Shown: in pieces, positions 35,557 through 62,915 of the stretch | How the letters are laid out: the number at the start of each line of letters is the position of its first letter | How positions within the stretch are numbered: the first letter of the stretch is position 1 | IMG/VR virus record: IMGVR_UViG_3300010158_000027 | Coordinates: 124,001 to 188,000 of that record | Direction: 5' to 3' (one strand) | Length of the DNA stretch: 64,000 bases | Position numbers and translations under genes: made by a program | Notes under the pieces: model-generated | The model's database searches: none | Told to the model about the DNA's origin: nothing | Seen by the model: the letters and a program-made list of their open reading frames with translations, nothing else

Positions 35557-35570
35557 GTTGGGATTTTTTA
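35544..35570 (+). terminator. intrinsic terminator closing the replication block
   Basis: ATCCCGAC-ATTAG-GTTGGGAT followed by a T-tract. Confidence 0.75.
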
Positions 35571-35617
35571 TTTTACCGCTATTTATAACAAAAGTTACAA
35601 CATTATATTTATATAAT

Positions 35618-36079
35618 ATGGCAGACGGAATTACTTATGGTTTAGGGTTCCCCTTTAGACAAAGTCAAAAGGGAACTTATGTGTATTTAACGGAAACTAC
35701 TGGTGATGAAATTAGAAGTAACTTAATACATTTATTATTAACCCGACGTGGTTATAGATATTACTTACCCGATTTTGGGACTAGACTGTATGAGTTTATT
35801 TTTGAACCATTAGACGGACAAACCTTTGATACGATTAAAAGTGAAATCGAAGAGACGGTTAGGAAGTATATACCAAACCTAACAATAGAGAACATCACAA
35901 TTGAGGGGTATGTTGATTCTGAACCATCTATCGGTGATATGCCTACAGAACAATTCGATATACCTATTTATAGGGTACCTGGAGCAAATACGGAGGAATA
36001 CACCGCGAAGGTTAAAATAGAATACACCGATGACAATAACCCATTTGGGTCTAAGGAGTTTGTAATTATAAATTTATAA
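35618..36079 (+). CDS. baseplate wedge protein (gp25-like)
   Basis: FPF..EIRSNLIHLLLTRRG.RY..PDFGT.LY..IFEP. The true start is ATG 35618, 5 nt after TATTTAT. Confidence 0.9.
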   Translation: MADGITYGLGFPFRQSQKGTYVYLTETTGDEIRSNLIHLLLTRRGYRYYLPDFGTRLYEFIFEPLDGQTFDTIKSEIEETVRKYIPNLTIENITIEGYVDSEPSIGDMPTEQFDIPIYRVPGANTEEYTAKVKIEYTDDNNPFGSKEFVIINL

Positions 36080-36083
36080 TATT

Positions 36084-48002: not shown

Positions 48003-48911
48003 ATGGCATTAGGTGCATATGGTATAGTTAGACCCGCAGACGTTTCACCACAAGATGTTGAAATAATATTAAATTACACACCATCAAGGGATGTTACGAA
48101 TAATTTTGTACTTAAAAAATTAGACGCGGCGAGTATTTTAACCCCGTATTTCCACAATAGTGATACGGGGGGAAACGCTAACATCGAAATACTCGGTGGA
48201 TTATATAATCTTAAATTACCCGCAAGTGAATTTAATAAAGTTGGTATATATACTTTGTATGTAAGACCCGCTGAGATAAGAACAAAAATTGAGGATTGTG
48301 GGATTTTATCAGCATTACCGAATGTTAAGGGTATCGTTTTAAATCTTAATAACGTACCACAACAATATAGAAACAAATTCACAAACCAGGGATTGGTTGG
48401 GTTTAGAATTGAATATTTAAATTCTGACGGAACAAAAATTCCCAACTTTTATAGAATAGTAACCTCATCTTTTTTCTGTGAACCGATTATTACTGATCAA
48501 GTAAATACGTCACAAAAAGTGATAAGATATAGATATTTAGAGAATGCTGGTGATTTATTATTTTGTACACTTTCACCATCGGCATCACCAACAAATAAAC
48601 CAAGCGCTACTCCATTTATTGGGCAACCAAACCAAAATATAATAATAACTAATACATTTTTTAATCCAATAACTATGGACATCCAAATCGCGGAGCACGA
48701 TATCGATACTTTGGCTATTGCATTATATGGTAATCAAACTAAGAGTATTGATGATGGTATTTACACACTTTATGATAGTGCAAATAACATATATAAACAG
48801 TACAATCTATTTGAGGTTAGAGACAACTTTAATGAATTATTATATGAGGTTAGACAAGATAGAGGGGTAAACATAGATTTTAGTAAAAACTTTACAAATA
48901 TTATTAGTTAA
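48003..48911 (+). CDS. virion structural protein
   Basis: 302 aa, TATTTAT upstream, coupled to the next gene. Confidence 0.6.
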   Translation: MALGAYGIVRPADVSPQDVEIILNYTPSRDVTNNFVLKKLDAASILTPYFHNSDTGGNANIEILGGLYNLKLPASEFNKVGIYTLYVRPAEIRTKIEDCGILSALPNVKGIVLNLNNVPQQYRNKFTNQGLVGFRIEYLNSDGTKIPNFYRIVTSSFFCEPIITDQVNTSQKVIRYRYLENAGDLLFCTLSPSASPTNKPSATPFIGQPNQNIIITNTFFNPITMDIQIAEHDIDTLAIALYGNQTKSIDDGIYTLYDSANNIYKQYNLFEVRDNFNELLYEVRQDRGVNIDFSKNFTNIIS

Positions 48912-51898
48912 TGGCAAAAACTAAATATACCTTCCCACCACAACCAGCAATTGGTTCTGCGACGTTTTCTGATGATTTAGTTGGGTTACAATTAGTCGGA
49001 GGGGGAGGATTGACGCTTGGAAATTTTGAATTCACATCAGCAATTACTGAAAAAAACAATCGTTCATTTACCACTGGAGTTTTTTCGGAACCATTTAATT
49101 TAGAGAATTTACAAATCCCTACAATTGAACAAGCAAAGATTTTAATACAAAAAAATTTCCAAGTATATCCTAATTATGACTTATCACAAATTACAAGTTT
49201 TTCTTTGTATGGTTCTTTACAAAAAAGGATGTCAGCATCCATCACTAAGATAATTAACTTTTTCCCGGCAGCGATACAGGTCGACACGGTAAATTATGCG
49301 CTACAAACGGGGAATACCGCCAGTAATATAGTATATGATGAGATAGCTCATGAAACGTCATTTGATATTGATGTCACCTACCTTAAAAACCCATTTGATA
49401 TTGATTATTCGTTAAATGCTAATAAAAACATTTCGGCAAGACCGATGAAGGTTTCTAAATATAGAAATTTATCTAGTTATTATACTGACTTTTCGTTATA
49501 TATCGAAAACTTTGATGTCGAATATAAAGTCGTTGATTTTGACGCATCACCAACCCTTACTGGGGGTACGGTGACGGTTTACGTCGAAGGGAAACCATTT
49601 ACGTCGACAACAACAACGGACACGTTAATACTTAAACCTAACGATTTAGTCACCGAAAAAGTTTTTAGTGATGATTTTGATGTGGTTGAGGATTATATGT
49701 TAAATAGGGTTTCAAACCCATTATATACTACGGTTTTTAAATATCCCGACTACGACAGTAACGGTAATTTCGTTATGTATACTAAAAAAGTTGTGTGGAA
49801 TTTAGATGGTTTATGGAATTTAGATATTAGAACTGAATTGTTTGATACGTATCTTGCAAACATAAATTACATTGCCGAAGCTTTAGATGTCTATAAAACG
49901 AATTTAATTAGTAGGTTTTTAACTTCAGGGTCATTAAAAGAATTTGATACCCAAGATCAAAAGGTTGAAAAAGTATTACAATTATATGGTAGAAGTTTTG
50001 ATGAAGTTAAAACGTTCGTCGATTCACTTACACATATGACTTCAGTTAATTATGTTGTTGGGGATGACATACCGTCACAATTATTAAAAAATTTAGCACA
50101 AACATTAGGTATAAATACTAATATGTCACCCATAACTAACGACTCTTTGTTGGGTACGATATTCTCAACGGCAACTGAAGTTATATATCCTGGACAATTA
50201 AACCAACAAACCCCTGCGGAATTAAACTACCAGTTTTATAGAAATATAATATTAAATTCTGGATTTTTATTTAGATCTAAAGGTACTAGGAAATCGATAG
50301 AATATATTTTAAGAATGGTAGGTGCGCCTGAGGCGTTAATAGAATTTAATGAATATATCTACATCGCCGATCAAAAAATATCGTTAGATGAGTTTAATGA
50401 GCAATACATTCAAATATCGGGAGGTACTCAATACGTTGAATCACCAGCGTATTTAACGAGTAACACCTTTAAGATTTTAGGAACACAATATACAGGATTC
50501 ACATCTAGTGGGTTTTTAAGACAATCTAATTTAGATTTAATATATTATCCGTTTAATCTTGATACTGGGTATCCTCAGCGTCCTGAGTATACCGACGATT
50601 ACTTCTTTCAAAAAGGAGCGGGATGGTTTGAAGTCACTCCCGATCATCGATCAAGTGAGCAGATTAATACCTCATTATCTAATTTCAATGTCAGTCCCGC
50701 AGTTATTAAAACTAGTTTAAAACCATTCACATATGGGGAGGATTATTTGGACAGGTTTAGAAAGTTCCCATTTTTAGAAATTGGGTATAATTTAACAAAA
50801 ACAATAGATAATAAGAAGTCGTGGAAAGCTGACGAAGTGGGGTTAAGGAAATATAACGAATCCCTATCCCAAACAAATTATTATGTTGAGGACGAAAGGT
50901 TAGTGTTGAATGTTAAAAACATGGAGGTTTATTTGAACATGGGTCAAGGTATCACTTATGATATTTGGGAAATGTCATCTAAATATGGTTATCCAATCCC
51001 AAATTCGGGATTAACGGCACCATACCCAACGCCAGGGCTTAATGACTGGACGGTTATTAACCCTAAACCTGATAAGAAAACATTTGCGGAGTTTGCCCAA
51101 ACATTCTATAATAATTTAATAAATGTTAGAAATAGACAAACCATATTTGATGGTAAAACGGGCGGGTATCCGGCTCTACAGTCTATTTTTTGGAAATATT
51201 TACAAACCGATCAAACTATAAACATACCGAATAATAAATTCACCTACCAAAAAATGATTGATTTCACTTTAGGTTTAGGTGACTATTGGGTGAGGTTCTT
51301 AGAGCAATTTGTACCAGCAACCACTATTTGGAATACGGGGCAAAAAATGGACAACTCAATATTTCACAGACAAAAAGTTGTTTGGAGAAGACAAAGGAGT
51401 TGTGAATACATTGCGTTGTCTTGTATACCATGTGAGTATAATGGACAACCTTATACGTATGATTGTATCGATCAAACAACACAATGTACTTTACCAACAT
51501 TTGACCCAGCATCGGTTTTAAACCAAAAAGTACAACAGTTGTACGCATCTTCAGGGTTTACGAGTACCGATTGTGACGTCACTACAATAATTGCTAATTG
51601 GTCGGTAGTTTTAAAATTGAAAGATATTGTAACGAATGTTGAAACCACATTAATTGATGAACCTATTTTTACGTCCTACGGACAAAGCGCAATCGACACG
51701 TCGACGAACCTACCGGTTTCATATTATAACATTATAAACTATATTGACAATGCCCTCGAGTATTTATATCAAAACGGATTAAACTACTCTTTTGTTGGGG
51801 GAACCCTAATTATTAGTAACTCATCTTGTTACGATAATTTTACAAATAAACAATTAAACCTAAATATTGGTTTAAACATACAAATTAATTGTGGATAA
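48911..51898 (+). CDS. baseplate wedge protein (gp7 / P2 gpI-like domain)
   Basis: LLKNLAQTLG...FYRNI..FLFRSKGTRKSIEYIL motif. Confidence 0.65.
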   Translation: MAKTKYTFPPQPAIGSATFSDDLVGLQLVGGGGLTLGNFEFTSAITEKNNRSFTTGVFSEPFNLENLQIPTIEQAKILIQKNFQVYPNYDLSQITSFSLYGSLQKRMSASITKIINFFPAAIQVDTVNYALQTGNTASNIVYDEIAHETSFDIDVTYLKNPFDIDYSLNANKNISARPMKVSKYRNLSSYYTDFSLYIENFDVEYKVVDFDASPTLTGGTVTVYVEGKPFTSTTTTDTLILKPNDLVTEKVFSDDFDVVEDYMLNRVSNPLYTTVFKYPDYDSNGNFVMYTKKVVWNLDGLWNLDIRTELFDTYLANINYIAEALDVYKTNLISRFLTSGSLKEFDTQDQKVEKVLQLYGRSFDEVKTFVDSLTHMTSVNYVVGDDIPSQLLKNLAQTLGINTNMSPITNDSLLGTIFSTATEVIYPGQLNQQTPAELNYQFYRNIILNSGFLFRSKGTRKSIEYILRMVGAPEALIEFNEYIYIADQKISLDEFNEQYIQISGGTQYVESPAYLTSNTFKILGTQYTGFTSSGFLRQSNLDLIYYPFNLDTGYPQRPEYTDDYFFQKGAGWFEVTPDHRSSEQINTSLSNFNVSPAVIKTSLKPFTYGEDYLDRFRKFPFLEIGYNLTKTIDNKKSWKADEVGLRKYNESLSQTNYYVEDERLVLNVKNMEVYLNMGQGITYDIWEMSSKYGYPIPNSGLTAPYPTPGLNDWTVINPKPDKKTFAEFAQTFYNNLINVRNRQTIFDGKTGGYPALQSIFWKYLQTDQTINIPNNKFTYQKMIDFTLGLGDYWVRFLEQFVPATTIWNTGQKMDNSIFHRQKVVWRRQRSCEYIALSCIPCEYNGQPYTYDCIDQTTQCTLPTFDPASVLNQKVQQLYASSGFTSTDCDVTTIIANWSVVLKLKDIVTNVETTLIDEPIFTSYGQSAIDTSTNLPVSYYNIINYIDNALEYLYQNGLNYSFVGGTLIISNSSCYDNFTNKQLNLNIGLNIQINCG

Positions 51899-54816
51899 TG
51901 GCTTGTATTTCAGGTTATACTAACGACGTATATTATAGTTATTTTGATTGTTGCGGTAACTTACAAACAGGTATTGGACCATTGTACCAATCTGTCTGCG
52001 TTGACCAATCATTATCGGGTAGTGCCGTTGGGGTTTATTTGGACCCACTTTCGGCTTGTACCCAAAATTGTAATACTGGACCCTTAAGTTATAATTTTAT
52101 AACGAGTGGTAATTGTGGTACAATTTCTGCGGGAACAATAACCGTTAATGTCTATGGGGGATCACAACCATATACGATTGATAATGTAAGTCCGGGTAGT
52201 ATATCTGCTCAGACAAACACATCACAATTTGTCTTTACTGGGTTAACGGGAGGGACATACGTTTTTAGAATAAATGACAGTTTAGGGTTACAAAATAGTG
52301 AAGTTTACTTTAATGCTGTGATATCCGAATGTTATACCGCCACAGTGACGTCCGTAACGGGAACAACTTGTGGATTGAGTAACGGAGCTATGGTTGTTAA
52401 TTCGACATCGACATCGGCACCTTATAAATTAGTTATTAATAAAGACGGGAATTTTAATTCAATACTTGACGCCACATCTTTACCTTATACTGTGACTGGT
52501 TTGGATGATGGTATATATGATGTTTTAATATACGATTATGGGTTTACCACGGCAAGAACTGAAAACGTAATTATTAGTGGGAGTACGGGGATTGACTACG
52601 GTTTTTGGGTGGTTAACGCGGCGAACTGTGTTACCAACGGAGGAAAGGCGGCAGTTACTGGTACAACAGGTACGGGTCCGTTTACTTATCTTTGGTCTAA
52701 TGGGCAAACGGGGCAGTTGGCAACGGGACTAACTCAGGGAGTTTTGTCTGTGTTAGTTACCGATTATTATGGGTGTACAACCGAAAAACAAGTTTTAATA
52801 GGACAGGCACTTCCTTTAGGTGTCGGACTAACAACGTCAATAAACCCATCTTGTAGTGGTAGTGACGGATCATTAACATTTAATTTAACTGGAGGTACCG
52901 CACCTTTTTATTATTCGGCAAACACTGGAACTGTTGGTTACACGTTATCTAATAGTTTTACATTGGATAATTTAGCGAGTGGTTCATATGTTGTGAATAT
53001 TAGAGATGCTAACTTTTGTGAGCTAGTTGTTGGTGGGTTTCTAATATCTCAAAACGGATTTTATAATGTAAGTAATACTATCACTAATTCTGTTTGTAAT
53101 CAAAACTCCGGTAAAATTAGTACAACATTAAACGGAACTTTTGGGAATTATATATACGCATTAACGGGACTAACAACCAATGAAGTTAGAAATACCGTAT
53201 CGACAAATCAAACGAACTTATTTGATAATTTACCTAACGATACATACCTACTATTCATATCGGGACAAAACACGACATGTATATATAGTGAAACTATTGT
53301 TGTTTCGTCACAAGAGAAGTTTTCAGTTAATGTTTCATTAACCGGATCAACGTGTGGAACACCAAATGGGGTTGCGATGATTAACGTGGGTACTGGCTAC
53401 ACTAATTGGGATACGGGTAACGGATTATTAGATTATTCGTTAAGTAATGGACAGCAAGTGTATGACATTAATTTATCCGCATTTACATATACTAATTTAG
53501 TGGCTGGAACTTATACTTTAAATGTTACCGATGAGAGTAATTGTACTGTCAGTAAAACATTTACAATCGCTTTGGGTGGGACTTTAAATAGTTCCATTTT
53601 AACTAACGATTGCCAAGGTGGTGGAGCGGGTTCTGCAAATGTTATAATTTTTGGTGGTGAGCCACCATTCACATATATATGGTCAAATAACGTACCTATA
53701 GGTGAAACCGGTAATACCGTAAATAACCTTACTGGTGGATCATATAGTGTCGAAGTGGTTGATGGTAGTGGATGTACAAAATACCACAATTTTACAATAG
53801 ATTGTACATCGACACTGGTTACTGGTGATACCACTTATAGTATCTGTAGTTCTCAGTTCACAACAACAACGGGAACAAAAAGAGGTATATCAGAAATGTT
53901 AAGTGAAGGGTTTTTAGATTTAACCACCGGTTATACTAATTGTATATTAAATTCGGTAACTTTAAATTGTAATATAACTCTAAACGGTAGTGGTTATAGT
54001 CAGAGTTTTGTTATTGCTAATGACGAGATTTGGAGAGAATCTATTGAAACGATTTTAGCGTCAATACCCGAAGTTGGTAGTTATGATGTTAATTTATTAA
54101 ATAATACGTTAACCATAAAATCTAATTGCACCAACGGGGGGATTGACCCAATTGGTAATGGTGAGTTTGTTTTAGAACTTGAAATAAATTACGATATAAG
54201 TTGTGAAGGTGTTTTACCGGCACCGACACCTACACCAACAGCAGTACCATACCCACTTTTCTTTGTGAAGGCTTGTTGTGTATTGGATAGTGATGGTATT
54301 ATGGGGTTACCTGCAGTTTTTGCTACGGGTACTAGAATTGTGGGTACTAATGGTAAATGTTATCAAAAATCATCAGCTAGTGTTGGACCAGCAACTCTGA
54401 CTTGGGATGGTGGTACTACATATGTGGATTGTCCTAGTTGTTTAAGTGTACATCCATGTCCAACACCAATACCTACGGCAACACCAACGCCAACACCTAC
54501 ACCTACAGGTATGCCGAGCTACACAACATGGTACGGTACTGGTAATATGGTTTCACAACCATACGCTGGTCTGGCTTGTAGTGAAGTAAATTGCTCAACA
54601 CAATTCTACACTACGGGATTAACTTTAAATGTTGGTGACGTTATTTATTTGGACGCAGCATTGACGACAAATATAGGTGGTTTAGCGGTTAATTATGGAC
54701 CATCCAGCGGTGGGTGGGGAGTTATGTTCTTATCTAATGATTGTCCAATTGTTGGGTCGAGAACGATAACTAAAGTAAACAATCTAGGTAAAATCATATT
54801 AAAATACACTTGTTAA
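51898..54816 (+). CDS. fibre/appendage protein with about 7 SprB-like repeats, Cys module and Pro-Thr linkers
   Basis: For example C..NGG..GTGPFTYLWSNGQT..TGL..G..V.VTD..GC; PTPTPT tracts at 54217 and 54460. ATG 51898 overlaps the upstream TAA. Confidence 0.8.
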   Translation: MACISGYTNDVYYSYFDCCGNLQTGIGPLYQSVCVDQSLSGSAVGVYLDPLSACTQNCNTGPLSYNFITSGNCGTISAGTITVNVYGGSQPYTIDNVSPGSISAQTNTSQFVFTGLTGGTYVFRINDSLGLQNSEVYFNAVISECYTATVTSVTGTTCGLSNGAMVVNSTSTSAPYKLVINKDGNFNSILDATSLPYTVTGLDDGIYDVLIYDYGFTTARTENVIISGSTGIDYGFWVVNAANCVTNGGKAAVTGTTGTGPFTYLWSNGQTGQLATGLTQGVLSVLVTDYYGCTTEKQVLIGQALPLGVGLTTSINPSCSGSDGSLTFNLTGGTAPFYYSANTGTVGYTLSNSFTLDNLASGSYVVNIRDANFCELVVGGFLISQNGFYNVSNTITNSVCNQNSGKISTTLNGTFGNYIYALTGLTTNEVRNTVSTNQTNLFDNLPNDTYLLFISGQNTTCIYSETIVVSSQEKFSVNVSLTGSTCGTPNGVAMINVGTGYTNWDTGNGLLDYSLSNGQQVYDINLSAFTYTNLVAGTYTLNVTDESNCTVSKTFTIALGGTLNSSILTNDCQGGGAGSANVIIFGGEPPFTYIWSNNVPIGETGNTVNNLTGGSYSVEVVDGSGCTKYHNFTIDCTSTLVTGDTTYSICSSQFTTTTGTKRGISEMLSEGFLDLTTGYTNCILNSVTLNCNITLNGSGYSQSFVIANDEIWRESIETILASIPEVGSYDVNLLNNTLTIKSNCTNGGIDPIGNGEFVLELEINYDISCEGVLPAPTPTPTAVPYPLFFVKACCVLDSDGIMGLPAVFATGTRIVGTNGKCYQKSSASVGPATLTWDGGTTYVDCPSCLSVHPCPTPIPTATPTPTPTPTGMPSYTTWYGTGNMVSQPYAGLACSEVNCSTQFYTTGLTLNVGDVIYLDAALTTNIGGLAVNYGPSSGGWGVMFLSNDCPIVGSRTITKVNNLGKIILKYTC

Positions 54817-54819
54817 AAG

Positions 54820-55107
54820 ATGCCATACTCCATAGATATATCTAATATTGTTGGTGGGACACCACCATATAGTCTTTATGTGTGTGATGAAAACATGAAT
54901 AACTGTTTTTTGTTAGGACCAACAGGGGGGACGTATTATTTTAATTCTTTTTTTTCTGGAGCACAAACTCTAATAATTAAAATTGTTGACAGTACGGGGT
55001 GTCTCACATTTAAGTACATTTATTGTGATATTGATACTTTCTTTATTTTAACTGAGACTGAACTCATAATAACCACAGAAAGTGGGGATGAATTAGTATG
55101 GATATAA
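54820..55107 (+). CDS. small Cys-containing beta protein (paralogue 1)
   Basis: [22 protein letters not shown]. Confidence 0.7.
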
Positions 55108-55108
55108 A

Positions 55109-55714
55109 ATGATTATTGAAATAACGGGGGTTACAAATGGTAATGGACCATATGACATTTATTTATGTGATTCGGGGTTAACGGGTTGCTTTTATGTGTC
55201 TGGAGTTACCACTATACCACCAACAATAACCATTGATAGTAATAATTTTTTTCCAGGTGTTGACCCTCTAAAGGTGAAGATTATTAATAGTATTGGGTGT
55301 ACGGATGTTATGGACGTTACTTGTATACCAACACCAACACCAACCCCTACGGCGACACCAACCCCGACAGCCACGCCAACTGCGACACCAACACCTACGG
55401 CAACAGCAACACCAACGCCAACACCTACCCCAACACTGGCTCCCCTCGATTTCCAAACCTTAGTTATTTGTTCATTACCTTCAGGTATCCTTGTCCAACT
55501 TAACACTATAACAGGAGGGGTTCCGCCTTATGATGGTGGATCTACCGTATTCTCAACCCAAGCTGCCGCGTTATTAAACACGTCATGGATATTAAACGTT
55601 GGTAATATTAGTTATGGGGTTTCTAGTTTGGCTGACGACACCTATTGGTTAGTTGTAAAAGACTCTGTAGGTACTATATTAGCAAAATCTGTAACAACGA
55701 CTTGTTATCCGTAA
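55109..55714 (+). CDS. two-domain protein with 36-aa Pro-Thr/Ala linker (paralogue 2)
   Basis: [19 protein letters not shown] followed by (PT/AT)n. Confidence 0.75.
55328..55435 (+). repeat. mucin-like (Pro-Thr/Ala-Thr)n coding tract
   Basis: [36 protein letters not shown]. Confidence 0.9.
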
Positions 55715-55798: not shown

Positions 55799-57049
55799 AT
55801 GAATACAATTTTTATTCAAATTGCTGCCTATCGAGATCCCCAACTTAATATAACAATTAAAGACTGTATTAAAAACGCTAAACACCCTAAAAATTTAGTG
55901 TTTGGTGTTTGTAATCAATTTCACCCAGACGATGAATTTAATATTGATGAATACCAAAATGACGAAGGATTTAGAATTGAGAATGTCCTTTATTCCAACT
56001 CTAAAGGGACTTGTTGGGCTAGAAACTTATTACAACAAAGATATAGTGGAGAAACATATACTCTACAAGTGGATTCCCATATGAGATTCGCACCCAATTG
56101 GGATGTTGAACTAATTAAAATGATTAAACAACTACAAAAGAAAGGATTTAAGAAACCCCTTTTAACTGGATACGTTTCCTCTTTTGATCCTGAGAATGAC
56201 CCGGCAGGTAGAGTCCAAGATCCTTGGAGGATGTCATTTGATAGATTTATACCTGAAGGTGCCGTATTTTTCTTACCCGAAACGATTCCGAATTGGCAAA
56301 CATTAACGGAACCAGTTCCTGCTAGATTCTACTCAGCACATTTTTGTTTTACATTAGGAATCTTTAGTCAGGAGGTACAACATGATAATGAATTTTATTT
56401 CCACGGCGAAGAAATTGCTGTGGGTGTTAGAGCATACACTCACGGGTATGATTTATTTCATCCACACAAAACTTTAATTTGGCACGAATATACTCGTAAA
56501 AACCGAGTTAAAAGTTGGGACGACGATAAAGAGTGGGGTAAAAAAAATGAATCAGCACATTTAAAAAACAGAAAACTATTCTCAATGGATGGTGAGGTTT
56601 ATAACCCAGATGAGTTCGGAAAATACGGTTTCGGAACTGAAAGGACACTTAGGGATTATGAAATTTATTCTGGATTACTTTTTTCAAAAAGAGCGACACA
56701 ACAATATACCATAGATAAACACTACCCACCAAATCCCTATGATTATAAAACCGAAGAAGAGTGGGTTAATAGTTTTTCATCTATTTTTAAACATTGTATT
56801 GATGTGTATCGTGGTAGTTTAACGGACACGGATTACGATTTTTGGGCGGTAATATTTTTAGATAAAAATGGAGATGAAATCTTTAGAAAGGATGCCGATA
56901 AGAACGAAATTAGTGGTATTTTAACTAAACAAGGTGATTTTGTTAATATTTGGAGAGAATTTAATACAACAATTAAACCATCAGAATGGGTTGTTTGGTT
57001 ACATACAGAATCAAAAGGTTGGGGTGAAAAAATAACGGGGAAATTATGA
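55799..57049 (+). CDS. GT60-like polypeptide alpha-N-acetylglucosaminyltransferase (Pfam GlcNAc family)
   Basis: TIFIQIAAYRD, SKGTCWAR, QVDSHMRF..WD (DxH), FYSAHF.F, FHGEE and WHEY motifs. No signal peptide or TM anchor. Confidence 0.85.
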   Translation: MNTIFIQIAAYRDPQLNITIKDCIKNAKHPKNLVFGVCNQFHPDDEFNIDEYQNDEGFRIENVLYSNSKGTCWARNLLQQRYSGETYTLQVDSHMRFAPNWDVELIKMIKQLQKKGFKKPLLTGYVSSFDPENDPAGRVQDPWRMSFDRFIPEGAVFFLPETIPNWQTLTEPVPARFYSAHFCFTLGIFSQEVQHDNEFYFHGEEIAVGVRAYTHGYDLFHPHKTLIWHEYTRKNRVKSWDDDKEWGKKNESAHLKNRKLFSMDGEVYNPDEFGKYGFGTERTLRDYEIYSGLLFSKRATQQYTIDKHYPPNPYDYKTEEEWVNSFSSIFKHCIDVYRGSLTDTDYDFWAVIFLDKNGDEIFRKDADKNEISGILTKQGDFVNIWREFNTTIKPSEWVVWLHTESKGWGEKITGKL

Positions 57050-57843
57050 GAATTGAAAAACCGACAATAGTTACCGCATTATTTGATATTGGTAGAGATG
57101 CTTGGGATGGATACGAGTTATCCTACGGTACTTATCTATATTGGATGAAATCGATATTGATGTACGACACCCCAATGGTTATATATACCGATGAAAAGTT
57201 ATATGATGAGATAAAAAAAAATAGAATGGTTTGTGACCCAAACTTAGAAAAAACCATTTTTGAAATTAAAAAATTGGAGGATTTAGTTGCCCACCAGACG
57301 TATTATAAACCGGTAAGTGAACTTATGGTTTCAGATGAGTTTAAATCTAAAATACATTTTAATGTCCCAGAAATGACAAAACCATTATATAATATTGTCA
57401 TTTTTAATAAGCTGTTTTATATACAGGAATCAATAATGAAAAAACATTTTGATTCTGATTTTTATATTTGGGCGGACGCGGCAATCCTTAGAAGTGATGA
57501 TCCGACAATTAAAAAAGATTTCCCAAACGTGGATAAAATAAATGATGGATTTAATGATAAAATCACTTTTTTTAGTCATGAATTGGAATTTACAACACCA
57601 AATAAAGACTACCATTTAGTATCACAATTTAGATACATACATGGAGGATGTTTTTTTGTACCAAATAATAATTCGATTGATTTACTATTGGAGAGTTTTA
57701 AAAAAGAAATAAACGAGTCGTTAAATCGAGGGTTTGTTGGTAGTGAAGAAAAATACTTAGATTTTTGTTATCTGGAGAATAAGTCTGAATATAACCTAGT
57801 TAAATCCGATTGGAGGCAATATTTTGACATATTTGGAACTTAA
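57046..57843 (+). CDS. HtrL/YibB-family glycosyltransferase-like protein
   Basis: TIVTALFDIGR..W, PMVIYT, PLYN.V.FNK, YIWADA, GGCFF and GSEE motifs; ATGA overlap with the GT60 gene. Confidence 0.75.
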   Translation: MRIEKPTIVTALFDIGRDAWDGYELSYGTYLYWMKSILMYDTPMVIYTDEKLYDEIKKNRMVCDPNLEKTIFEIKKLEDLVAHQTYYKPVSELMVSDEFKSKIHFNVPEMTKPLYNIVIFNKLFYIQESIMKKHFDSDFYIWADAAILRSDDPTIKKDFPNVDKINDGFNDKITFFSHELEFTTPNKDYHLVSQFRYIHGGCFFVPNNNSIDLLLESFKKEINESLNRGFVGSEEKYLDFCYLENKSEYNLVKSDWRQYFDIFGT

Positions 57844-57895: not shown

Positions 57896-59521
57896 ATGGC
57901 AAATTTATTATTCCAGGGTTGTTGTTACGATGGTTATCAGTATGTTACTAATGATGGTGATTGGGTTGCGACGGGAGGTACCGCGACGGTAGGTTTAACC
58001 TATCATTTTTCTGGTGATCCTGTTGTACCTAATGGTTGTTATACTATTGTCTCATCATTCGTTGCTGGGTTTAGTTCAGAAACATTTACACAATTAACGG
58101 GAACATACACTCTACAAACCGATTGTTCTGACACTCTATGTATGACGGCAAATTGTTGTTCAAACATTGTGTGTGTTAGCATACCATTAGATGCGTATTC
58201 GGGACTTAATGGTAATTATACGGTATCGGGTGGATTTAATGGATATCCCTATTGGACGGGAGGAACTAGTGGAGGAACCATCTATTTTAATTCAACGAGA
58301 TGGTGTCTTTCAACAGGACTAAATCAAAGTTGTTTATTTTATGGGTCTAACCCAACGTTATATGAATGTCCTGATTTAGATACTAGTATTGTTTATAGTG
58401 GTGTTTGTGTACCAACACCAACACCATATGACCCATGTTCTATTTTAGATTTTGATATATTGACCGAATGTTTGATACCGACACCTACGCCGACACCCAC
58501 GGCAACGGCAACACCCACTCCGACACCAACACCTACCCCAACACCTGATCCGTGTTTAGGGTACTCAGTTGATATTAGTTTTAGTGCAACAACACCGACA
58601 CCAACGGCAACACCATCACCAACGGCAACACCAACACCTACGTTCGCTTACTCAATTAATTCGGGGGTAACCTTTGTGATTGATAGTGGTAATTTTAATT
58701 GTGTGGATGTTAAAGTGTTAACTGATTGTAATAGTAGTGAGATTTATTACGTTTCTGGTCCTCTAGTTTATTCTGGTGGAGTCATTAGTTCAGGAACAAC
58801 ATTTTTTGGTATTATAAATGGTGATTATAAGTGTTTAACATATACTGAGGATAATGCGGGAAGTCCTGGAGACTTATTAACCTCGATTATATCGACGGGA
58901 AGTAGTTGTTCTACTTGTGTGGTAATAACGCCAACACCAGCACCTACGTTGACCCCTACCGCCACTCCAACACCGACGCCAACATCCACTCCAACACCAA
59001 CATACGCACCTAATACTCAATTTGTGTTTACGTCTTGTACTAATAATTCGATGATAATACAAAATATGACACCACCTTCGAATGTTAATATAGGGTTGGT
59101 AGTTAAAGACTTGTCGGGTAATTGTTATAGTTATGTTGGGAATTATGTTGCTTATGTTCCACCTGCAGGATATATATGGTCAAATATTAACGCCTTTACT
59201 GCCGCTACTGCAACGACATATAGTACTTGTATTTCTTGTTTAACTCCTTCACCAACACCAGGACCCGCTTACCGTACTTGGAACGCGAAAGGTGAGTTTA
59301 CGGTTTCATGTCCGACATGTGAATTAGTAAATGGGGGAGCCGACATGACTTTCTATAGTTCATCTGCAGATACGATATTACAAACGGGGGTATATATTTA
59401 TGAAGACACTACTTTAGTTACTCCTGTAATAACGAGTTATGTTAAATATTCAAATAAAATTTATTCAGTAGATTTAAATGGTAAAATTACTGAATTTTGC
59501 ACATTAAACGGTAATTGTTAA
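57896..59521 (+). CDS. Cys-rich modular appendage protein with multiple Pro-Thr tracts
   Basis: 541 aa; PT tracts at about 58411, 58478-58546, 58585-58642, 58927-59010 and 59243. Confidence 0.8.
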   Translation: MANLLFQGCCYDGYQYVTNDGDWVATGGTATVGLTYHFSGDPVVPNGCYTIVSSFVAGFSSETFTQLTGTYTLQTDCSDTLCMTANCCSNIVCVSIPLDAYSGLNGNYTVSGGFNGYPYWTGGTSGGTIYFNSTRWCLSTGLNQSCLFYGSNPTLYECPDLDTSIVYSGVCVPTPTPYDPCSILDFDILTECLIPTPTPTPTATATPTPTPTPTPTPDPCLGYSVDISFSATTPTPTATPSPTATPTPTFAYSINSGVTFVIDSGNFNCVDVKVLTDCNSSEIYYVSGPLVYSGGVISSGTTFFGIINGDYKCLTYTEDNAGSPGDLLTSIISTGSSCSTCVVITPTPAPTLTPTATPTPTPTSTPTPTYAPNTQFVFTSCTNNSMIIQNMTPPSNVNIGLVVKDLSGNCYSYVGNYVAYVPPAGYIWSNINAFTAATATTYSTCISCLTPSPTPGPAYRTWNAKGEFTVSCPTCELVNGGADMTFYSSSADTILQTGVYIYEDTTLVTPVITSYVKYSNKIYSVDLNGKITEFCTLNGNC

Positions 59522-59526
59522 ATAAT

Positions 59527-59814
59527 ATGGGGACAATAGTTTCATTAACATCAACAACAGGTATACTACCACTGGACATATGGATATGTGATTCCTGCGA
59601 TAGTACCGCCACCTGTGTTTATTATGACACAACATCATCTTTACCGTACAGTTTTACTTTACCTTCTGAATATGAGAATAATATCATTTACGCCATCAGA
59701 GTTATCGATGATACTGGTTGTATTTATTGTAACTCGGTAAGTGCATTAACTTTACAATATCAAGACGGAGGATATGCTGAATTTCAAGATGGGGATGAAT
59801 TTGATTTCCAATAA
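59527..59814 (+). CDS. small Cys-containing beta protein (paralogue 3)
   Basis: PLDIWICDSCD..C..IRVIDDTGC; ATG 59527 is preferred over TTG 59515. Confidence 0.7.
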   Translation: MGTIVSLTSTTGILPLDIWICDSCDSTATCVYYDTTSSLPYSFTLPSEYENNIIYAIRVIDDTGCIYCNSVSALTLQYQDGGYAEFQDGDEFDFQ

Positions 59815-59834: not shown

Positions 59835-61139
59835 ATGGCAAGATTAACAGATAAAACATTAGCATCAACAACGGCAATAACACCAACAACGTTGATATAT
59901 ATCGTAACAACCGGAGACACTTCACAAAATTCTGCCGGTTCGGGGTATAAAGCGGAATTACAACAATTAGTGTCTATTTTTGGTGGAACATCTGGAGGTT
60001 CAGGAACTAGCGGTATTAATGGAACTAGCGGTATTAATGGAACTAGTGGAATTAATGGTACTAGTGGTATTGACGGAACAAGTGGCACATCTGGTATCGA
60101 CGGAACTAGCGGTATCAACGGAACTAGTGGAACATCAGGTATTGATGGTACTAGTGGAATTAACGGAACTAGTGGGTCGTCGGGTATTAGTGCTGACTAT
60201 ATTGGTACATGTCTCGATAATATTAATATATCATCATTATATTCAGGGTTAACTATCAATATAACGACATCCCCTAATTTATCTTATACCGTTGCTCAGC
60301 ATGTTATCGTAGCTTTTTCAAATACGGAACATTTTCATGGTGACGTTTTGACATATACCGGTTCTACGGGTCAGATACAATTAGAAGTAACAGAAACTCA
60401 AGGGTCTGGAACACACTCCACTTGGACAACCAATTTAGATGGGGCGTCTGGGGGTAATGGCTCTTCAGGCACTAGCGGTATTGATGGTACTAGTGGATTG
60501 TCGGGATCAAGCGGTACTAGTGGTTCTTCAGGAACTAGTGGATTGTCGGGATCAAGCGGTACTAGTGGTTCTTCAGGAACTAGTGGATTGTCGGGATCAA
60601 GCGGTAGTTCTGGGGTAAATGGTACATATACGGGAGGAACTATTAGTGGAGGAACAAACTTCACTGGTGGGTTGAGCGCTAACACGGTTAGTATTAGTGG
60701 TGTGACGGTAAACCCAAAACAAACAATTGCGTTATTTTTTGGTCATGATTCAACGAGTCCTGCAGATACTCAAACTTACTTTATTGGTAATGCGATAAAT
60801 CTAGCGGCAACAACTTCAGGGTCAGACAGTAGAAGAGTCATATTACCAAAAACGGGTAACATTGTTAGAGTTGATATTTGTCAAAACGTAGGAGGTACAG
60901 TCCAAACTGGGGCTACCGAATATAGTACATTCACGATAAATAATACAACACAATCCACACAATCAACAATAACGACTACATACATTTATACGGCATCGAC
61001 AGGAAATATTGCATATGACTTAGTGTCTCCATTACCGGTAACTGTTGGGGATAAAGTGGAAATAAGATGGACAACACCCGCTTGGGTTATTAACCCAACA
61101 AGTGTTAGACAACAAATGAACGTTTATTTAGAATATTAA
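59835..61139 (+). CDS. collagen-like fibre protein (Pro-free Gly-Thr-Ser repeats)
   Basis: Two uninterrupted G-X-Y runs (23 and 21 triplets), plus a C-terminal beta-sandwich knob. Confidence 0.85.
   Translation: MARLTDKTLASTTAITPTTLIYIVTTGDTSQNSAGSGYKAELQQLVSIFGGTSGGSGTSGINGTSGINGTSGINGTSGIDGTSGTSGIDGTSGINGTSGTSGIDGTSGINGTSGSSGISADYIGTCLDNINISSLYSGLTINITTSPNLSYTVAQHVIVAFSNTEHFHGDVLTYTGSTGQIQLEVTETQGSGTHSTWTTNLDGASGGNGSSGTSGIDGTSGLSGSSGTSGSSGTSGLSGSSGTSGSSGTSGLSGSSGSSGVNGTYTGGTISGGTNFTGGLSANTVSISGVTVNPKQTIALFFGHDSTSPADTQTYFIGNAINLAATTSGSDSRRVILPKTGNIVRVDICQNVGGTVQTGATEYSTFTINNTTQSTQSTITTTYIYTASTGNIAYDLVSPLPVTVGDKVEIRWTTPAWVINPTSVRQQMNVYLEY
59985..60191 (+). repeat. collagen G-X-Y block 1 (9/18-nt units)
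   Basis: ggaactagcggtattaat-type units. Confidence 0.9.
60441..60629 (+). repeat. collagen G-X-Y block 2 with near-perfect 45-nt tandem repeat
   Basis: 60486-60530 and 60531-60575 differ at one base; partial third copy to 60602. Confidence 0.9.
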
Positions 61140-61301: not shown

Positions 61302-62915
61302 ATGGGACAATTTAGTGGAAATACATGTAATATTATAACACTCTTCCCAATGGGGGTTGAATGTTCGGCAGTGAATTCATCTTCGCCGTATAATAATGAT
61401 GGTGCAATTTATTTGACAATTACTGGAGGAACACCACCTTATAAGATTTCATGGAATAATGGTTCTCAGACACAATACTTAACGGGTTTACAATTTGGAA
61501 CGTATACTGCTAATATAACGGATTATTATGGTGATTTTAGTGCAACAACAACTTGTATCGTGAGTACTAATTATGCTGCAATTTTAGAGGAGTTTTTTAA
61601 TTGTACCAACCCAACAGAAAAGATATATTACGTAGCAAACATTAACTCTTTATACCCAAGTAATGGTGTGTTCACTTTAACATCACAATCAGGATGTTGG
61701 GTTAGTGCAGGTATTATTACAAATACGGGACAAACGTTTTACAATTATAGTGCAATAACCACTTCAGGACCATTTGTGGACTGTGATGACTGTTTACCTA
61801 CAACGCCAGAAATAGAAAGTATATCAGGTATGTGTTTAACTACCGTTAAGTCAGTTTTTGGTGTACCATCGTCAACACAATACCAATTTTATTCTGCTGA
61901 TACAATGAACGGATACCCTACGTGGGTTTCAACATCACCTGACCAAAAAATTTATTTTAATACTATGACAAGTCAATGGAAAGTTTCTGGTTGGACATTA
62001 AGCGGTATACCGTCGTTAGGATTAAATGTTTCTCCACCTTTGGGGGTATGGACAGTGGATGGTAGTCCTCGAACTGTTAACGTAAGTGCTGGTAATTGTG
62101 ATGATAAAATTGTTGTGAGACTACGAACGACTGACCCATCATGTAACGTAGCGTCTGACGGACTTATTCAGGTTGGTGGGGTTATTGGTGGAACGGCACC
62201 ATATACGTATTCATTGGATAACATTGTGTACCAAACATCGATTATGTTTAATAATTTACCAGTTGGGAGTTATACTGTTTATGTGAAGGATATTATTGGC
62301 AATATCGGAACGGCGATAGCGGTATTGACGGGAATAAGTACAATAACAACATATCAGATAAATTTATCTCTTATTAGTACTCAAACGTTAAACACAACAA
62401 ACTACGCTCAAAAAATATATAATTGGGGTATTAACGTGACACCACCATTACCAGCAAACCGATCGGTGTCGTTTACGTTATATGATACTACATCAATGTC
62501 TGCGGGTACCGCATCTAACGGATCACCCGTTTTGACATATTCTAACACAACTGGTACGACAGGGACAAGTCAGTTTGTTACGTCAACATTGACAACAACA
62601 ACAAATAGTTATACGAACATACTTTGTCACCCTAATTATTATACAACAGGCATCACTCGAACGTATAATGTTAGTATATCGGGTACAGGTGTTGTTGGTG
62701 GTCAGATATTACAAAAAGTACAAGTCGTTAATAATGGGGTAAAGTGTACGACTACTGGATCAATAAAGGATACGTTATCTATTGGTAATGTCGTTTTAAA
62801 TAATCAACAAGTGTGTGAACAAATAAGTCCTTCAGTAACGCCAATTACCGTTGTTGTTGGAATGTCCGGAACCATAGCTTCCATAACCATAGGCACAGGT
62901 AGTGCATCGATGTAA
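61302..62915 (+). CDS. fibre/appendage protein with SprB-like repeats and Cys module
   Basis: ITGGTPPYKISWNNG..TGLQFGTY and GGTAPYTYSLD..FNNLPVGSYTVYVKD. Confidence 0.78.
   Translation: MGQFSGNTCNIITLFPMGVECSAVNSSSPYNNDGAIYLTITGGTPPYKISWNNGSQTQYLTGLQFGTYTANITDYYGDFSATTTCIVSTNYAAILEEFFNCTNPTEKIYYVANINSLYPSNGVFTLTSQSGCWVSAGIITNTGQTFYNYSAITTSGPFVDCDDCLPTTPEIESISGMCLTTVKSVFGVPSSTQYQFYSADTMNGYPTWVSTSPDQKIYFNTMTSQWKVSGWTLSGIPSLGLNVSPPLGVWTVDGSPRTVNVSAGNCDDKIVVRLRTTDPSCNVASDGLIQVGGVIGGTAPYTYSLDNIVYQTSIMFNNLPVGSYTVYVKDIIGNIGTAIAVLTGISTITTYQINLSLISTQTLNTTNYAQKIYNWGINVTPPLPANRSVSFTLYDTTSMSAGTASNGSPVLTYSNTTGTTGTSQFVTSTLTTTTNSYTNILCHPNYYTTGITRTYNVSISGTGVVGGQILQKVQVVNNGVKCTTTGSIKDTLSIGNVVLNNQQVCEQISPSVTPITVVVGMSGTIASITIGTGSASM

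What the first reader, a model, noticed from the sequence alone, without database searches (positions are those of the whole stretch)
52075..53810. SprB gliding-adhesin repeats in phage fibres
Seen: about seven SprB-like units in the 975-aa ORF, two more in 61302-62915 and a partial one in 55109-55714. Known: SprB repeats form the filamentous surface adhesin of gliding Flavobacterium. Inference: the phage captured the host adhesin stalk to build long fibres, or as a mimic that binds the gliding machinery or the same surfaces and polysaccharides as its host.
Basis: partly seen in the sequence, partly recalled or inferred. Interest (0 to 1): 0.6.

Follow-up and report, generated by a model that had tools for sequence, protein, structure and literature searches.

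The report
SprB-type Ig repeats in phage tail proteins
Two tail-module proteins of an uncultured 281-kb freshwater phage carry strings of SprB-family immunoglobulin-like domains, an old conserved feature of this phage lineage and one more case of phages using Ig-like domains as surface stalks, not a recent theft of a host gliding adhesin.

Summary
The gene at 51898-54816 (972 aa from its ATG) has seven diverged ~78-aa units at residues 66-638, and it scores above the Pfam SprB cut-off. ORF537 (61302-62915) has two units. ORF201 has one diverged unit plus a variant unit.

AlphaFold2 models every unit as a beta-sandwich. The best structural matches are strings of Ig/FN3 domains.

The window comes from a 281-kb IMG/VR myophage. 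Both genes lie downstream of gp25-like and gp6-like baseplate genes, in a block that also holds a collagen-like fibre gene.

The proteins have orthologues in the same gene order across a large clade of uncultured freshwater jumbo phages. Each unit position forms its own clade in a tree, so the array is older than the clade. True bacterial relatives (giant Flavobacteriaceae repeat proteins) are only 25-29% identical.

Neither protein has a T9SS C-terminal domain, and ORF975 has no signal peptide. That removes the parts of SprB that engage the gliding machinery.

The unit profile also matches T5 pb10, Hoc and a neck-whisker protein. It matches Cellulophaga phage phi19:1 gp98, which mass spectrometry found in virions.

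Best reading: tail or baseplate accessory stalks and adhesins of a phage that probably infects Bacteroidota. Verdict: a new member of a known kind, of modest interest.

The parts
48911..51898 (+). ORF995, the conserved upstream neighbour. Its stop codon overlaps the start of the SprB-repeat gene (TAATG).
   Evidence: Sequence. It is always directly upstream of the SprB-repeat gene in relatives. It is 48-57% identical in 4 orthologues. There are only weak leads to baseplate wedge proteins: Pfam Tail_P2_I E 0.28 and Atlas feature score 0.83.
51898..54816 (+). SprB-repeat protein ('ORF975'; 972 aa from the ATG). Residue numbers in this report count from TTG 51889.
   Evidence: Pfam SprB 35.2 bits. 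The orthologue consensus starts MACxSG. The Atlas holds the sequence from residue 4 read as M.
51898..52083 (+). N-terminal Cys-rich small beta domain (aa 4-65), conserved. Inferred to be the attachment domain.
   Evidence: AF2 strands 6-56. Invariant C22, C37, C57 and C61 in 33 orthologues. The attachment role is inference only.
52084..52326 (+). SprB-type Ig-like unit 1 (aa 66-146)
52330..52578 (+). unit 2 (aa 148-230)
52597..52806 (+). unit 3 (aa 237-306); Pfam SprB stretch
52822..53052 (+). unit 4 (aa 312-388); Pfam SprB stretch
53059..53310 (+). unit 5 (aa 391-474)
53317..53571 (+). unit 6 (aa 477-561), with a 9-aa insertion
53581..53802 (+). unit 7 (aa 565-638); best Pfam SprB stretch (aa 574-601)
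53887..54204 (+). conserved alpha/beta domain (aa 667-772). This is the end of the part shared by all orthologues.
   Evidence: AF2 pLDDT 70-83. Orthologues of about 770 aa stop here, and 79% of the query is covered.
54211..54813 (+). variable C-terminal add-on (aa 775-975): small Cys-containing modules joined by Pro/Thr linkers
   Evidence: It is present only in the closest relatives. AF2 confidence is low. It is similar to modules of ORF541 and ORF201. There is a PT-coding DNA repeat at 54460-54507.
54820..55107 (+). ORF95: a single variant unit (GGTPPY ... IKIVDSTGC)
   Evidence: Profile E 2e-3. 33% identical to the ORF201 N-terminus. A conserved 94-95-aa gene occupies this position in relatives.
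55109..55714 (+). ORF201: N-terminal variant unit, PT linker (about 55325-55438), and a C-terminal diverged SprB-type unit (about 55469-55696)
55799..57843 (+). two glycosyltransferase-like genes inside the block (PF11397 GlcNAc-transferase family; HtrL_YibB)
   Evidence: The PF11397 gene is at the same place in three relatives and the HtrL_YibB gene in one.
57896..59521 (+). ORF541: several small Cys-containing modules joined by long PT linkers. It shares modules with the C-terminus of the SprB-repeat protein.
59835..61139 (+). ORF434: collagen-like tail-fibre protein
   Evidence: Pfam Collagen 58 bits. PHROG tail-fibre families.
61302..62915 (+). ORF537: conserved five-domain beta protein with two SprB-type units (aa 16-87 = 61347-61562; aa 270-343 = 62109-62330)
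   Evidence: Pfam SprB 42.9 bits. AF2 pLDDT 85.8. Full-length orthologues at 36-91% identity. At least 316 matching stretches in IMG/VR.
35558..37922 (+). baseplate wedge genes (gp25-like and gp6-like) that open the block
   Evidence: PHROG 261/43 and 219. The tail sheath gene is at 6754-9969.

Best explanation
The window is part of an uncultured freshwater jumbo myophage that probably infects Bacteroidota. ORF975 and ORF537 are conserved proteins of its baseplate/tail-fibre module. ORF975 is built like a beads-on-a-string accessory adhesin. It has a small conserved N-terminal domain that I infer fixes it to the baseplate periphery. Seven SprB-family Ig-like beta-sandwiches follow, forming a stalk of roughly 25-30 nm (inferred from about 4 nm per Ig domain). 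After them comes a conserved alpha/beta domain. The protein ends in a lineage-variable tail of small modules on Pro/Thr linkers, which I infer makes weak, reversible contacts with host-surface or environmental polysaccharide. ORF537 uses two of the same units as spacers between three other beta domains, and is a more strongly conserved structural part. The units act as inert, stable extracellular spacers, as in T4 Hoc, T5 pb10 and bacterial surface adhesins. They are not mimics of SprB. Shown here: family membership, fold, gene context, conservation and the age of the array. Inferred: virion location, attachment, binding function and host.
For: - Pfam SprB scores above cut-off on both proteins, and on 33 of 33 orthologues.
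- There are seven plus two units, each modelled as a beta-sandwich.
- Structural matches are Ig/FN3 domains: Z about 7, 2-3 A over about 70 residues, including RB49 Hoc and a Moo19 decoration protein. Multi-Ig filaments such as the Aureispira grappling hook GhpA match at E 4e-19.
- Phage context: tail sheath, gp25-like and gp6-like wedge genes upstream, a collagen-like fibre gene in the block, and a 281-kb virus record.
- The syntenic block is conserved on 100-310-kb contigs, and IMG/VR holds at least 316 relatives of ORF537.
- Each unit position is a separate clade across phages.
- The C-terminus beyond residue 772 is variable.
- The unit profile hits solved phage proteins: neck whisker gp24 at 1.5e-6, T5 pb10 at 2e-6 and Hoc at 3.5e-4. 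hhalign to pb10 gives 94% probability.
- The same unit occurs twice in Cellulophaga phage phi19:1 gp98. That protein is a structural protein by MS/MS and is the second gene after the tape measure.
- The only cultured-phage matches are phages of Flavobacteriaceae.
- Only 3 of 32 genes have a Shine-Dalgarno-like motif.
- The stretch is held in freshwater, lake and sediment metagenomes from 22 studies.
Against: - There is no direct evidence that either protein is in the virion.
- ORF995 and the other neighbours have no recognisable family, so 'baseplate periphery' rests on gene order alone.
- The complex prediction of the ORF995 C-terminus with the ORF975 N-terminus gave no answer.
- Classical tail fibres are trimeric beta-helical or coiled structures, not Ig strings, and the oligomeric state here is unknown.
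- The closest solved relatives of the unit sit on capsids and necks, so a head or neck location is not excluded.
- The C-terminal modules have no known fold or ligand.
- The host assignment is indirect.
Confidence: 0.6

Rival explanations
1. Hoc-like decoration. ORF975 (and perhaps ORF537) is a capsid or neck decoration or whisker protein rather than a tail or baseplate part. Its Ig string would project from the head for adherence to particles or mucus-like matrices.
For: The best sequence-level matches of the unit among solved structures are a neck whisker protein, the T5 capsid decoration protein pb10 and Hoc. RB49 Hoc and Moo19 decoration proteins are among the fold matches. The layout of an attachment domain plus an Ig string resembles Hoc (abstract of PMC10385173).
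Against: The gene sits in the run of genes that follows the gp25-like and gp6-like baseplate genes, next to a collagen-like fibre gene. In cultured Flavobacteriaceae phages the unit lies in the second gene after the tape measure. The stop/start overlap with ORF995 is conserved.
Confidence: 0.15
2. The phage took the stalk of its host's SprB/RemA gliding adhesin and uses it to mimic the adhesin. It would then bind the gliding or T9SS machinery, or the same substrata as the host.
For: Family membership is real. Giant Flavobacteriaceae proteins with 20-33 such units are the nearest cellular relatives. SprB and RemA are thought to act as phage receptors in F. johnsoniae (PMC9804748, citing Nelson 2008). 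Binding the same polysaccharides as the host is not excluded.
Against: ORF975 has no signal peptide and neither protein has a T9SS C-terminal domain; Por_Secre_tail hits in orthologues are sub-threshold and fall inside repeat units. Identity to bacterial proteins is 25-29%. The array is orthologous position by position across a deep phage clade. The unit is equally related to phage Ig-like decoration domains from coliphages that have nothing to do with gliding.
Confidence: 0.1
3. Primary receptor-binding fibre. ORF975 is the main host-range determinant. It would be an oligomeric fibre whose variable C-terminal modules bind the essential receptor, rather than an accessory adhesin.
For: The C-terminus varies between orthologues while the rest is conserved. 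The gene lies in the fibre block. The small modules are shared among ORF975, ORF201 and ORF541.
Against: Many orthologues (about 770 aa) lack any C-terminal add-on and end at the conserved alpha/beta domain. Other candidates lie in the block: the collagen-like ORF434, the 2104-aa propeller protein and ORF729. There is no evidence of oligomerisation.
Confidence: 0.15

Closest known systems
SprB / RemA / RemZ-type T9SS surface adhesins of Flavobacteriia (Pfam PF13573 SprB repeat)
   Same: The same Pfam repeat family, above cut-off. The ~78-aa unit profile built from the phage finds 20-33 units in giant Tamlana, Flavivirga and Mariniflexile proteins. It weakly matches F. johnsoniae RemZ (E 0.01). 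Both have a beads-on-a-string layout.
   Different: The phage proteins are 972 and 537 aa with 7 and 2 units, against thousands of residues and dozens of units. ORF975 has no signal peptide and neither protein has a T9SS C-terminal domain. They are encoded in a phage tail module. Identity is only 25-29%.
Phage Ig-like decoration and accessory domains: T4/RB49 Hoc, T5 pb10, neck whisker gp24 (PDB 9occ)
   Same: Profile-level sequence similarity of the unit, including the GGxxPYxY...GxYxVxVxD motif. The fold is Ig-like. T5 pb10 itself scores 25.5 bits on Pfam SprB. Both combine an attachment domain with an Ig string.
   Different: Those proteins carry 1-4 Ig domains and sit on the capsid or neck. 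They score best with the I-set, Ig_2 and Ig_3 models, whereas the units here score best with SprB. Here there are seven units, in a baseplate-module gene.
Cellulophaga phage phi19:1 gp98 (also Nekkels_1 gp50 and Polaribacter phage P12002S gp28)
   Same: Two copies of the same unit: 37 and 20 bits with the window-derived profile, and 49% identity over 49 aa to unit 2 of ORF537. It is a tail-tip-region gene, and gp98 was detected in virions by MS/MS. The hosts are Flavobacteriaceae.
   Different: These are siphophages of 50-57 kb and the rest of the protein is unrelated. Pfam SprB does not reach significance on them.
GhpA grappling-hook filament of Aureispira (PDB 9flp, 9fly, 9flw)
   Same: It is the best Foldseek match of the ORF975 model (E 4e-19 to 4e-16, 13-18% identity). 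It is a long extracellular filament of tandem beta-sandwich domains from a Bacteroidota bacterium.
   Different: It is a giant bacterial protein whose solved fragments span residues 1403-5009. TM-scores are low (0.16), so the match reflects tandem-domain architecture only.
Modular phage adhesins with Ig-like strings and binding modules (tentaclins, PMC10743442; gut-phage Ig-like adhesins, PMC13370021)
   Same: The concept is the same: Ig-like spacers carrying a terminal binding module, proposed to bind bacterial receptors or environmental surfaces.
   Different: The binding modules differ (C-type lectin there, unknown Cys-rich PT-linked modules here), as do the domain order and the phage lineages.

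Membership tests
Pfam PF13573 SprB repeat family | HMM score at or above the curated gathering cut-off (28 bits) | tested here: met
   35.2 bits for ORF975 and 42.9 bits for ORF537. 33 of 33 orthologues match, best E 1.8e-22. ORF201 is not hit.
Pfam PF13573 SprB repeat family | Occurs as tandem repeated units forming beta-sandwich domains | tested here: met
   Seven contiguous units at aa 66-638. AF2 gives seven beta-sandwiches. The phage-derived unit profile recognises 20-33 units in Flavobacteriaceae giant proteins.
SprB/RemA-type gliding-motility adhesin | N-terminal signal peptide for export | tested here: not met
   The N-terminus MACISGYTNDVYYSYFDCCGN has no hydrophobic signal segment (read directly; no predictor was run). 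By contrast, the unrelated phage ORF at G000:C1:79885-81168 does start with MKKLIIVLSFILNSILTLAQ.
SprB/RemA-type gliding-motility adhesin | T9SS C-terminal sorting domain (type A PF18962/TIGR04183, or type B TIGR04131) | tested here: not met
   No hit in Pfam or NCBIfam for ORF975, ORF537 or ORF201. Por_Secre_tail hits in orthologues score 18-25 bits, below the cut-off of 27, and lie inside repeat units rather than at the C-terminus.
SprB/RemA-type gliding-motility adhesin | Giant cell-surface protein (thousands of residues, dozens of units) encoded in a bacterial chromosome | tested here: not met
   972 and 537 aa, with 7 and 2 units, on a 281-kb virus record between baseplate and fibre genes.
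Phage Ig-like accessory/decoration domain class (Hoc, pb10 and related) | Ig-like beta-sandwich fold of about 70-90 aa on a phage structural-module protein | tested here: met
   Fold matches at Z 6.6-7.8 and 2-3 A over about 70 residues to Ig/FN3 domains, including Hoc. Profile hits to pb10, Hoc and neck whisker gp24.
Phage Ig-like accessory/decoration domain class (Hoc, pb10 and related) | Displayed on the outside of the virion; dispensable; weak adherence to carbohydrate | not testable with these tools
   The phage is uncultured. The only precedent is that phi19:1 gp98, which bears the same unit, is MS/MS-verified in virions.
Phage tail fibre / receptor-binding protein | Gene within the tail/baseplate morphogenesis block | tested here: met
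   It lies in the run of + strand genes that follows the gp25-like and gp6-like genes, with a collagen-like fibre gene nearby. The synteny is conserved.
Phage tail fibre / receptor-binding protein | Homo-oligomeric (usually trimeric) fibre attached to the baseplate | tested here: inconclusive
   Only one pair was tried, ORF995 C-terminus with ORF975 N-terminus, and it gave no answer. Homo-oligomers were not tested.

The most novel reading that the evidence does not exclude
Like-binds-like docking. The SprB-type Ig units of the phage stalk would pair homophilically with the same units on the host's own SprB/RemA-type filaments, which are thought to be phage receptors in F. johnsoniae. The virion would latch onto the moving adhesins and be carried along the gliding track to the cell surface. 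The neighbouring glycosyltransferases might glycosylate the Pro/Thr linkers of the fibre proteins.
Probability: 0.05. Interest if true: 0.75.

Novelty: new member of a known kind. Interest (0 to 1): 0.3.

Why it matters
It gives a concrete domain-level annotation for two otherwise 'hypothetical' conserved tail-module proteins of a widespread, uncultured clade of freshwater jumbo phages. It adds the SprB-type unit to the Ig-like domain types seen on phage structural proteins. It also links that unit to phages of Bacteroidota, since every cultured phage that matched infects Flavobacteriaceae. This makes the unit a possible host-phylum marker for viral contigs, and it points to candidate adhesion modules for experiments. 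It does not reveal a new mechanism: Ig-like stalks on virions are well known, and UniProt already labels some uncultured-phage proteins 'SprB repeat'.

Tried and rejected
- **T9SS domain at the fibre tip.** The precomputed Pfam lists showed PF18962 on several orthologues. Direct scans put those hits below the cut-off and inside repeat units. Rejected.
- **Recent capture from bacteria.** The genome-collection scan found only 25-29% identical Flavobacteriaceae proteins. The two closer hits (51% and 36%) are short contigs in Woesearchaeota and Aquiluna MAGs that look like misbinned phage DNA.
- **Near-identical or similar cultured phages.** Megablast of 48-64 kb found none. tblastn with full ORF975 matched only a 642-kb metagenomic phage. 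ORF537 and ORF995 matched nothing.
- **Full-length PDB sequence searches.** Nothing for ORF975, nothing significant for the ORF537 profile, and nothing for the ORF995 profile.
- **Complex prediction.** ORF995 residues 800-995 with ORF975 residues 4-150 gave 'no answer'. This is not evidence either way.
- **Link to the 'moraphage' lineage (PMC12619734).** No HSP70 gene in this genome, so the link is left open.
- **Atlas feature searches.** For ORF995 and for the ORF975 C-terminus they returned only viral hypothetical clusters.
- **Pfam on the cultured-phage proteins.** No SprB hit. Only my own unit profile links them.
- **Not used.** Read laying and the large representative-protein search, because the word search had already settled the question of relatives.
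Full report
**1. What the sequence is**

The window is bases 124001-188000 of a 281,269-bp IMG/VR virus record that CheckV estimates to be 96% complete.
- G+C is about 34%.
- Almost all long ORFs are on the + strand.
- PHROG and Pfam scans identify these genes:
  - a tail sheath (6754-9969);
  - replication genes: a UvsX-like recombinase, an exonuclease, a DnaB-like helicase and a ribonucleotide reductase;
  - a gp25-like baseplate wedge protein (35558-36079);
  - a gp6-like wedge protein (36084-37922);
  - a 2104-aa protein with DUF5122 beta-propeller repeats;
  - a collagen-like tail-fibre protein (59835-61139).
- The element is therefore a jumbo myophage. The finding lies in the run of genes that follows the baseplate wedge genes.

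**2. The observation**

Pfam gives direct support.
- PF13573 (SprB repeat, cut-off 28 bits) scores 35.2 bits on the 975-aa frame and 42.9 bits on ORF537. It does not hit ORF201.
- A six-frame search of the whole phage record found the same stretches, plus one more ORF outside the window.

A unit profile gives the count.
- I cut seven units by eye, aligned them with the two ORF537 units, and searched every open frame of the genome with the resulting profile.
- It returns seven full-length units at residues 66-638 of the 975-aa frame (nt 52084-53802) and two in ORF537.
- It also returns one diverged unit at the C-terminus of ORF201 (E 6e-6), a weak one in ORF95 (E 2e-3), and one in the outside ORF.
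- The scores on the training units are circular. Three non-circular results support them:
  - the profile finds 20-33 units per protein in giant Flavobacteriaceae proteins;
  - all 33 orthologues pass Pfam SprB;
  - AlphaFold2 places one beta-sandwich on each unit (pLDDT about 80 over 67-637, pLDDT 85.8 for ORF537).

Other properties of the units:
- They are 23-31% identical to one another.
- There is no DNA tandem repeat in 52075-53810. Only the Pro/Thr linkers and the collagen repeats show DNA repeats.
- The Pfam model (37 positions) covers only the first half of each ~78-aa unit. The second half (L..G.Y.V.V.D..GC) produces the sub-threshold Y_Y_Y, CarboxypepD_reg, BiPBP_C and Por_Secre_tail hits.

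One correction: the gene most probably starts at ATG 51898, which overlaps the TAA of ORF995 as TAATG. The orthologue consensus (MACxSG) and the Atlas record agree.

**3. Anatomy of the two proteins**

ORF975 (numbering from TTG 51889) has five parts.
- A small Cys-rich beta domain (aa 4-65) with invariant cysteines.
- Seven Ig-like units (aa 66-638). Most keep two conserved cysteines, for example C247/C296, C322/C377, C403/C464 and C575/C629.
- A conserved alpha/beta domain (aa 667-772).
- A tail of about 200 aa made of small modules on Pro/Thr linkers, modelled with low confidence.
- Orthologues align over residues 1 to about 772 (79% coverage). After that they either end or carry different C-terminal additions.
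- The C-terminal modules resemble modules in ORF541 and ORF201.

ORF537 has five beta domains: unit 1 (aa 16-87), two other beta domains (94-165 and 176-263), unit 2 (270-343), and a large beta-sandwich (349-522).

Fold searches gave generic answers.
- Each unit matches Ig/FN3 domains at Z about 7 and 2-3 A over about 70 residues. The matches include RB49 Hoc and a Moo19 decoration protein.
- The whole models match multi-Ig filaments: integrin legs, titin, and best of all the Aureispira grappling-hook protein GhpA at E 4e-19.
- The C-terminal sandwich of ORF537 matches only generic beta-sandwiches (PIG-T, pilins, CBMs) at Z of 8.3 or less. That is within the range the tool itself calls common.

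**4. Relatives**

- The word search found 378 relatives of ORF975 and 405 of ORF537.
- I looked up four ORF975 relatives at 51%, 51%, 36% and 35% identity. All lie in the same gene order on contigs of up to 310 kb. The order is roughly 575 / 280 / 360 / 302 / 985-995 aa, then the SprB-repeat protein, then small ORFs.
- In the closer relatives the block continues with the glycosyltransferase, a SprB protein of about 535 aa, and a protein of about 735 aa.
- IMG/VR holds at least 316 stretches that encode ORF537 relatives.
- The stretch itself is held in freshwater, lake and sediment metagenomes from 22 studies.
- A tree of 102 units makes each unit position (u1-u7 of ORF975, u1-u2 of ORF537) a single clade across phages, with one change each and SH-aLRT support of 74-99. 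The deep branches between phage and bacterial units are unresolved.
- The seven-unit array therefore predates the divergence of this clade.
- Cellular relatives are giant repeat proteins of Tamlana, Flavivirga, Mariniflexile and other Flavobacteriaceae/Bacteroidota, at 25-29% identity.
- The two closer 'genome' hits are short contigs in MAGs of unrelated taxa. They are probably misbinned phage DNA.

**5. What the SprB label means here**

- A profile of the nine units matches solved phage proteins by sequence:
  - a neck whisker protein (9occ, E 1.5e-6);
  - the T5 capsid decoration protein pb10 (E 2e-6; hhalign 94% probability);
  - RB49 Hoc (E 3.5e-4);
  - more weakly, F. johnsoniae RemZ (E 0.01).
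- T5 pb10 itself scores 25.5 bits on Pfam SprB, next to its above-threshold Ig_3, Ig_2 and I-set hits.
- The SprB repeat is therefore one branch of the Ig-like continuum that phages commonly display on virions. From my own knowledge: Fraser et al. 2006 described such domains on about a quarter of tailed phages. Hoc function is reviewed in PMC10385173.
- BFVD already lists uncultured-phage proteins that UniProt names 'SprB repeat'. One of them is the best viral structural match of ORF537 (E 1e-23).
- No paper in the held library discusses SprB repeats in phage structural proteins.

**6. Cultured precedents and host**

- A tblastn search with unit 2 of ORF537 hits one 642-kb metagenomic phage. 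Otherwise it hits only phages of Flavobacteriaceae: Cellulophaga phi19:1, Nekkels_1 and Nekkels_2, and Polaribacter P12002S and P12002L.
- My unit profile finds two units in phi19:1 gp98 (37 and 20 bits).
- gp98 is the second gene after the tape measure. Its record says it is a structural protein 'based on experimental MS/MS proteomics analysis'.
- Pfam SprB does not reach significance on these proteins, so the link rests on my profile and on BLAST.
- Only 3 of 32 genes in the window have a Shine-Dalgarno-like motif, against 17% at random positions, and the leaders are A-rich. From my own knowledge this is typical of Bacteroidota.
- A Bacteroidota host is thus likely but not shown.

**7. The capture and mimicry ideas**

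- The parts of SprB that engage export and the gliding track are missing. ORF975 has no signal peptide (read directly). Pfam and NCBIfam find no T9SS C-terminal domain.
- The precomputed PF18962 flags on orthologues are sub-threshold hits inside repeat units.
- The array is ancient and identity to bacteria is low. A recent capture of a host adhesin stalk is therefore not supported, and the direction of any old transfer cannot be read from these data.
- SprB and RemA are thought to be phage receptors in F. johnsoniae (PMC9804748). This keeps a small probability for a like-binds-like docking model, but nothing here tests it.

**8. Mechanism proposed**

- ORF975 is a tail or baseplate accessory adhesin made of four functional parts:
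  - an N-terminal anchor;
  - a seven-domain Ig stalk of roughly 25-30 nm (inference from about 4 nm per domain);
  - a conserved alpha/beta domain;
  - interchangeable PT-linked binding modules.
- ORF537 is a conserved structural part that uses two units as spacers.
- Shown: family, fold, context, conservation and age.
- Inferred: virion location, anchoring, binding and host.
- The one complex prediction gave no answer.
- Rivals:
  - a Hoc-like head or neck decoration;
  - a primary receptor-binding fibre;

**9. Verdict**

This is a new member of a known kind (Ig-like domains on phage structural proteins) and is of modest interest.

Noticed in passing
window 55799-57843: Two glycosyltransferase-like genes sit inside the fibre block, between proteins with long Pro/Thr linkers (ORF975 C-terminus, ORF201, ORF541). 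The first is PF11397 'GlcNAc', at 218 bits. From my own knowledge, this family includes cytoplasmic polypeptide GlcNAc-transferases. It is 48% identical to a glycosyltransferase of the Xanthomonas jumbo phages XacN1 and Xoo-sp13. The second is HtrL_YibB. The PF11397 gene is conserved at the same place in three relatives and the HtrL_YibB gene in one. Glycosylation of the fibre linkers is a possible function. In XacN1 the homologue lies among replication genes.
   Followed up: partly
outside the window: G000:C1:79885-81168 (L002:463-1746): A 428-aa ORF with a typical signal peptide (MKKLIIVLSFILNSILTLAQ) and one C-terminal SprB unit (32.9 bits). That unit groups with units of a Lake Erken Bacteroidetes MAG protein at 46% identity. 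It looks like a bacterial-type secreted protein carried by the phage, and it is the only unit with a hint of more recent exchange with bacteria. hmmscan on the trimmed protein did not list SprB. I did not find out why.
   Followed up: partly
window 37995-44309: A 2104-aa protein directly after the gp6-like wedge gene carries five DUF5122 beta-propeller repeats (133.7 bits). It has no PHROG match. It may be a very large baseplate or fibre component.
   Followed up: no
window, 32 gene starts: Only 3 of 32 genes have a Shine-Dalgarno-like motif, against 17% at random positions. The leaders are A/T-rich. This fits SD-independent initiation as in Bacteroidota.
   Followed up: partly
window 54820-55107, 55109-55330, 59515-59814: ORF95 and the N-terminus of ORF201 are single copies of a shortened variant unit (GGxxPY ... 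C ... IxIxDxxGC). The ORF95/ORF201 pair is significant. ORF99 looks similar by eye only. Genes of 93-95 aa occupy the same positions in relatives. They may be small stand-alone Ig-like fibre accessory proteins or chaperones.
   Followed up: partly
window 60489-60606: A perfect 45-bp DNA tandem repeat (2.6 copies, 100% matches) lies inside the collagen-like fibre gene ORF434, next to older diverged Gly-X-Y repeats at 60003-60175. This suggests recent repeat expansion and fibre-length variation.
   Followed up: no
L011 (CAYGYN010000032.1) and L012 (CAZGNP010000132.1): Short contigs that encode close orthologues of ORF975 (51% and 36% identity) are filed in MAGs named Woesearchaeota archaeon and Aquiluna sp.. 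They are probably phage contigs binned by mistake. They should not be read as host evidence.
   Followed up: no
window 1986-4853 (- strand): A 955-aa ORF combines matches to the terminase-large-subunit/P-loop region (aa 144-543) with matches to a DNA helicase (aa 537-936, PHROG 62, E 3e-105). This is an unusual fusion, or a helicase with an N-terminal P-loop domain.
   Followed up: no
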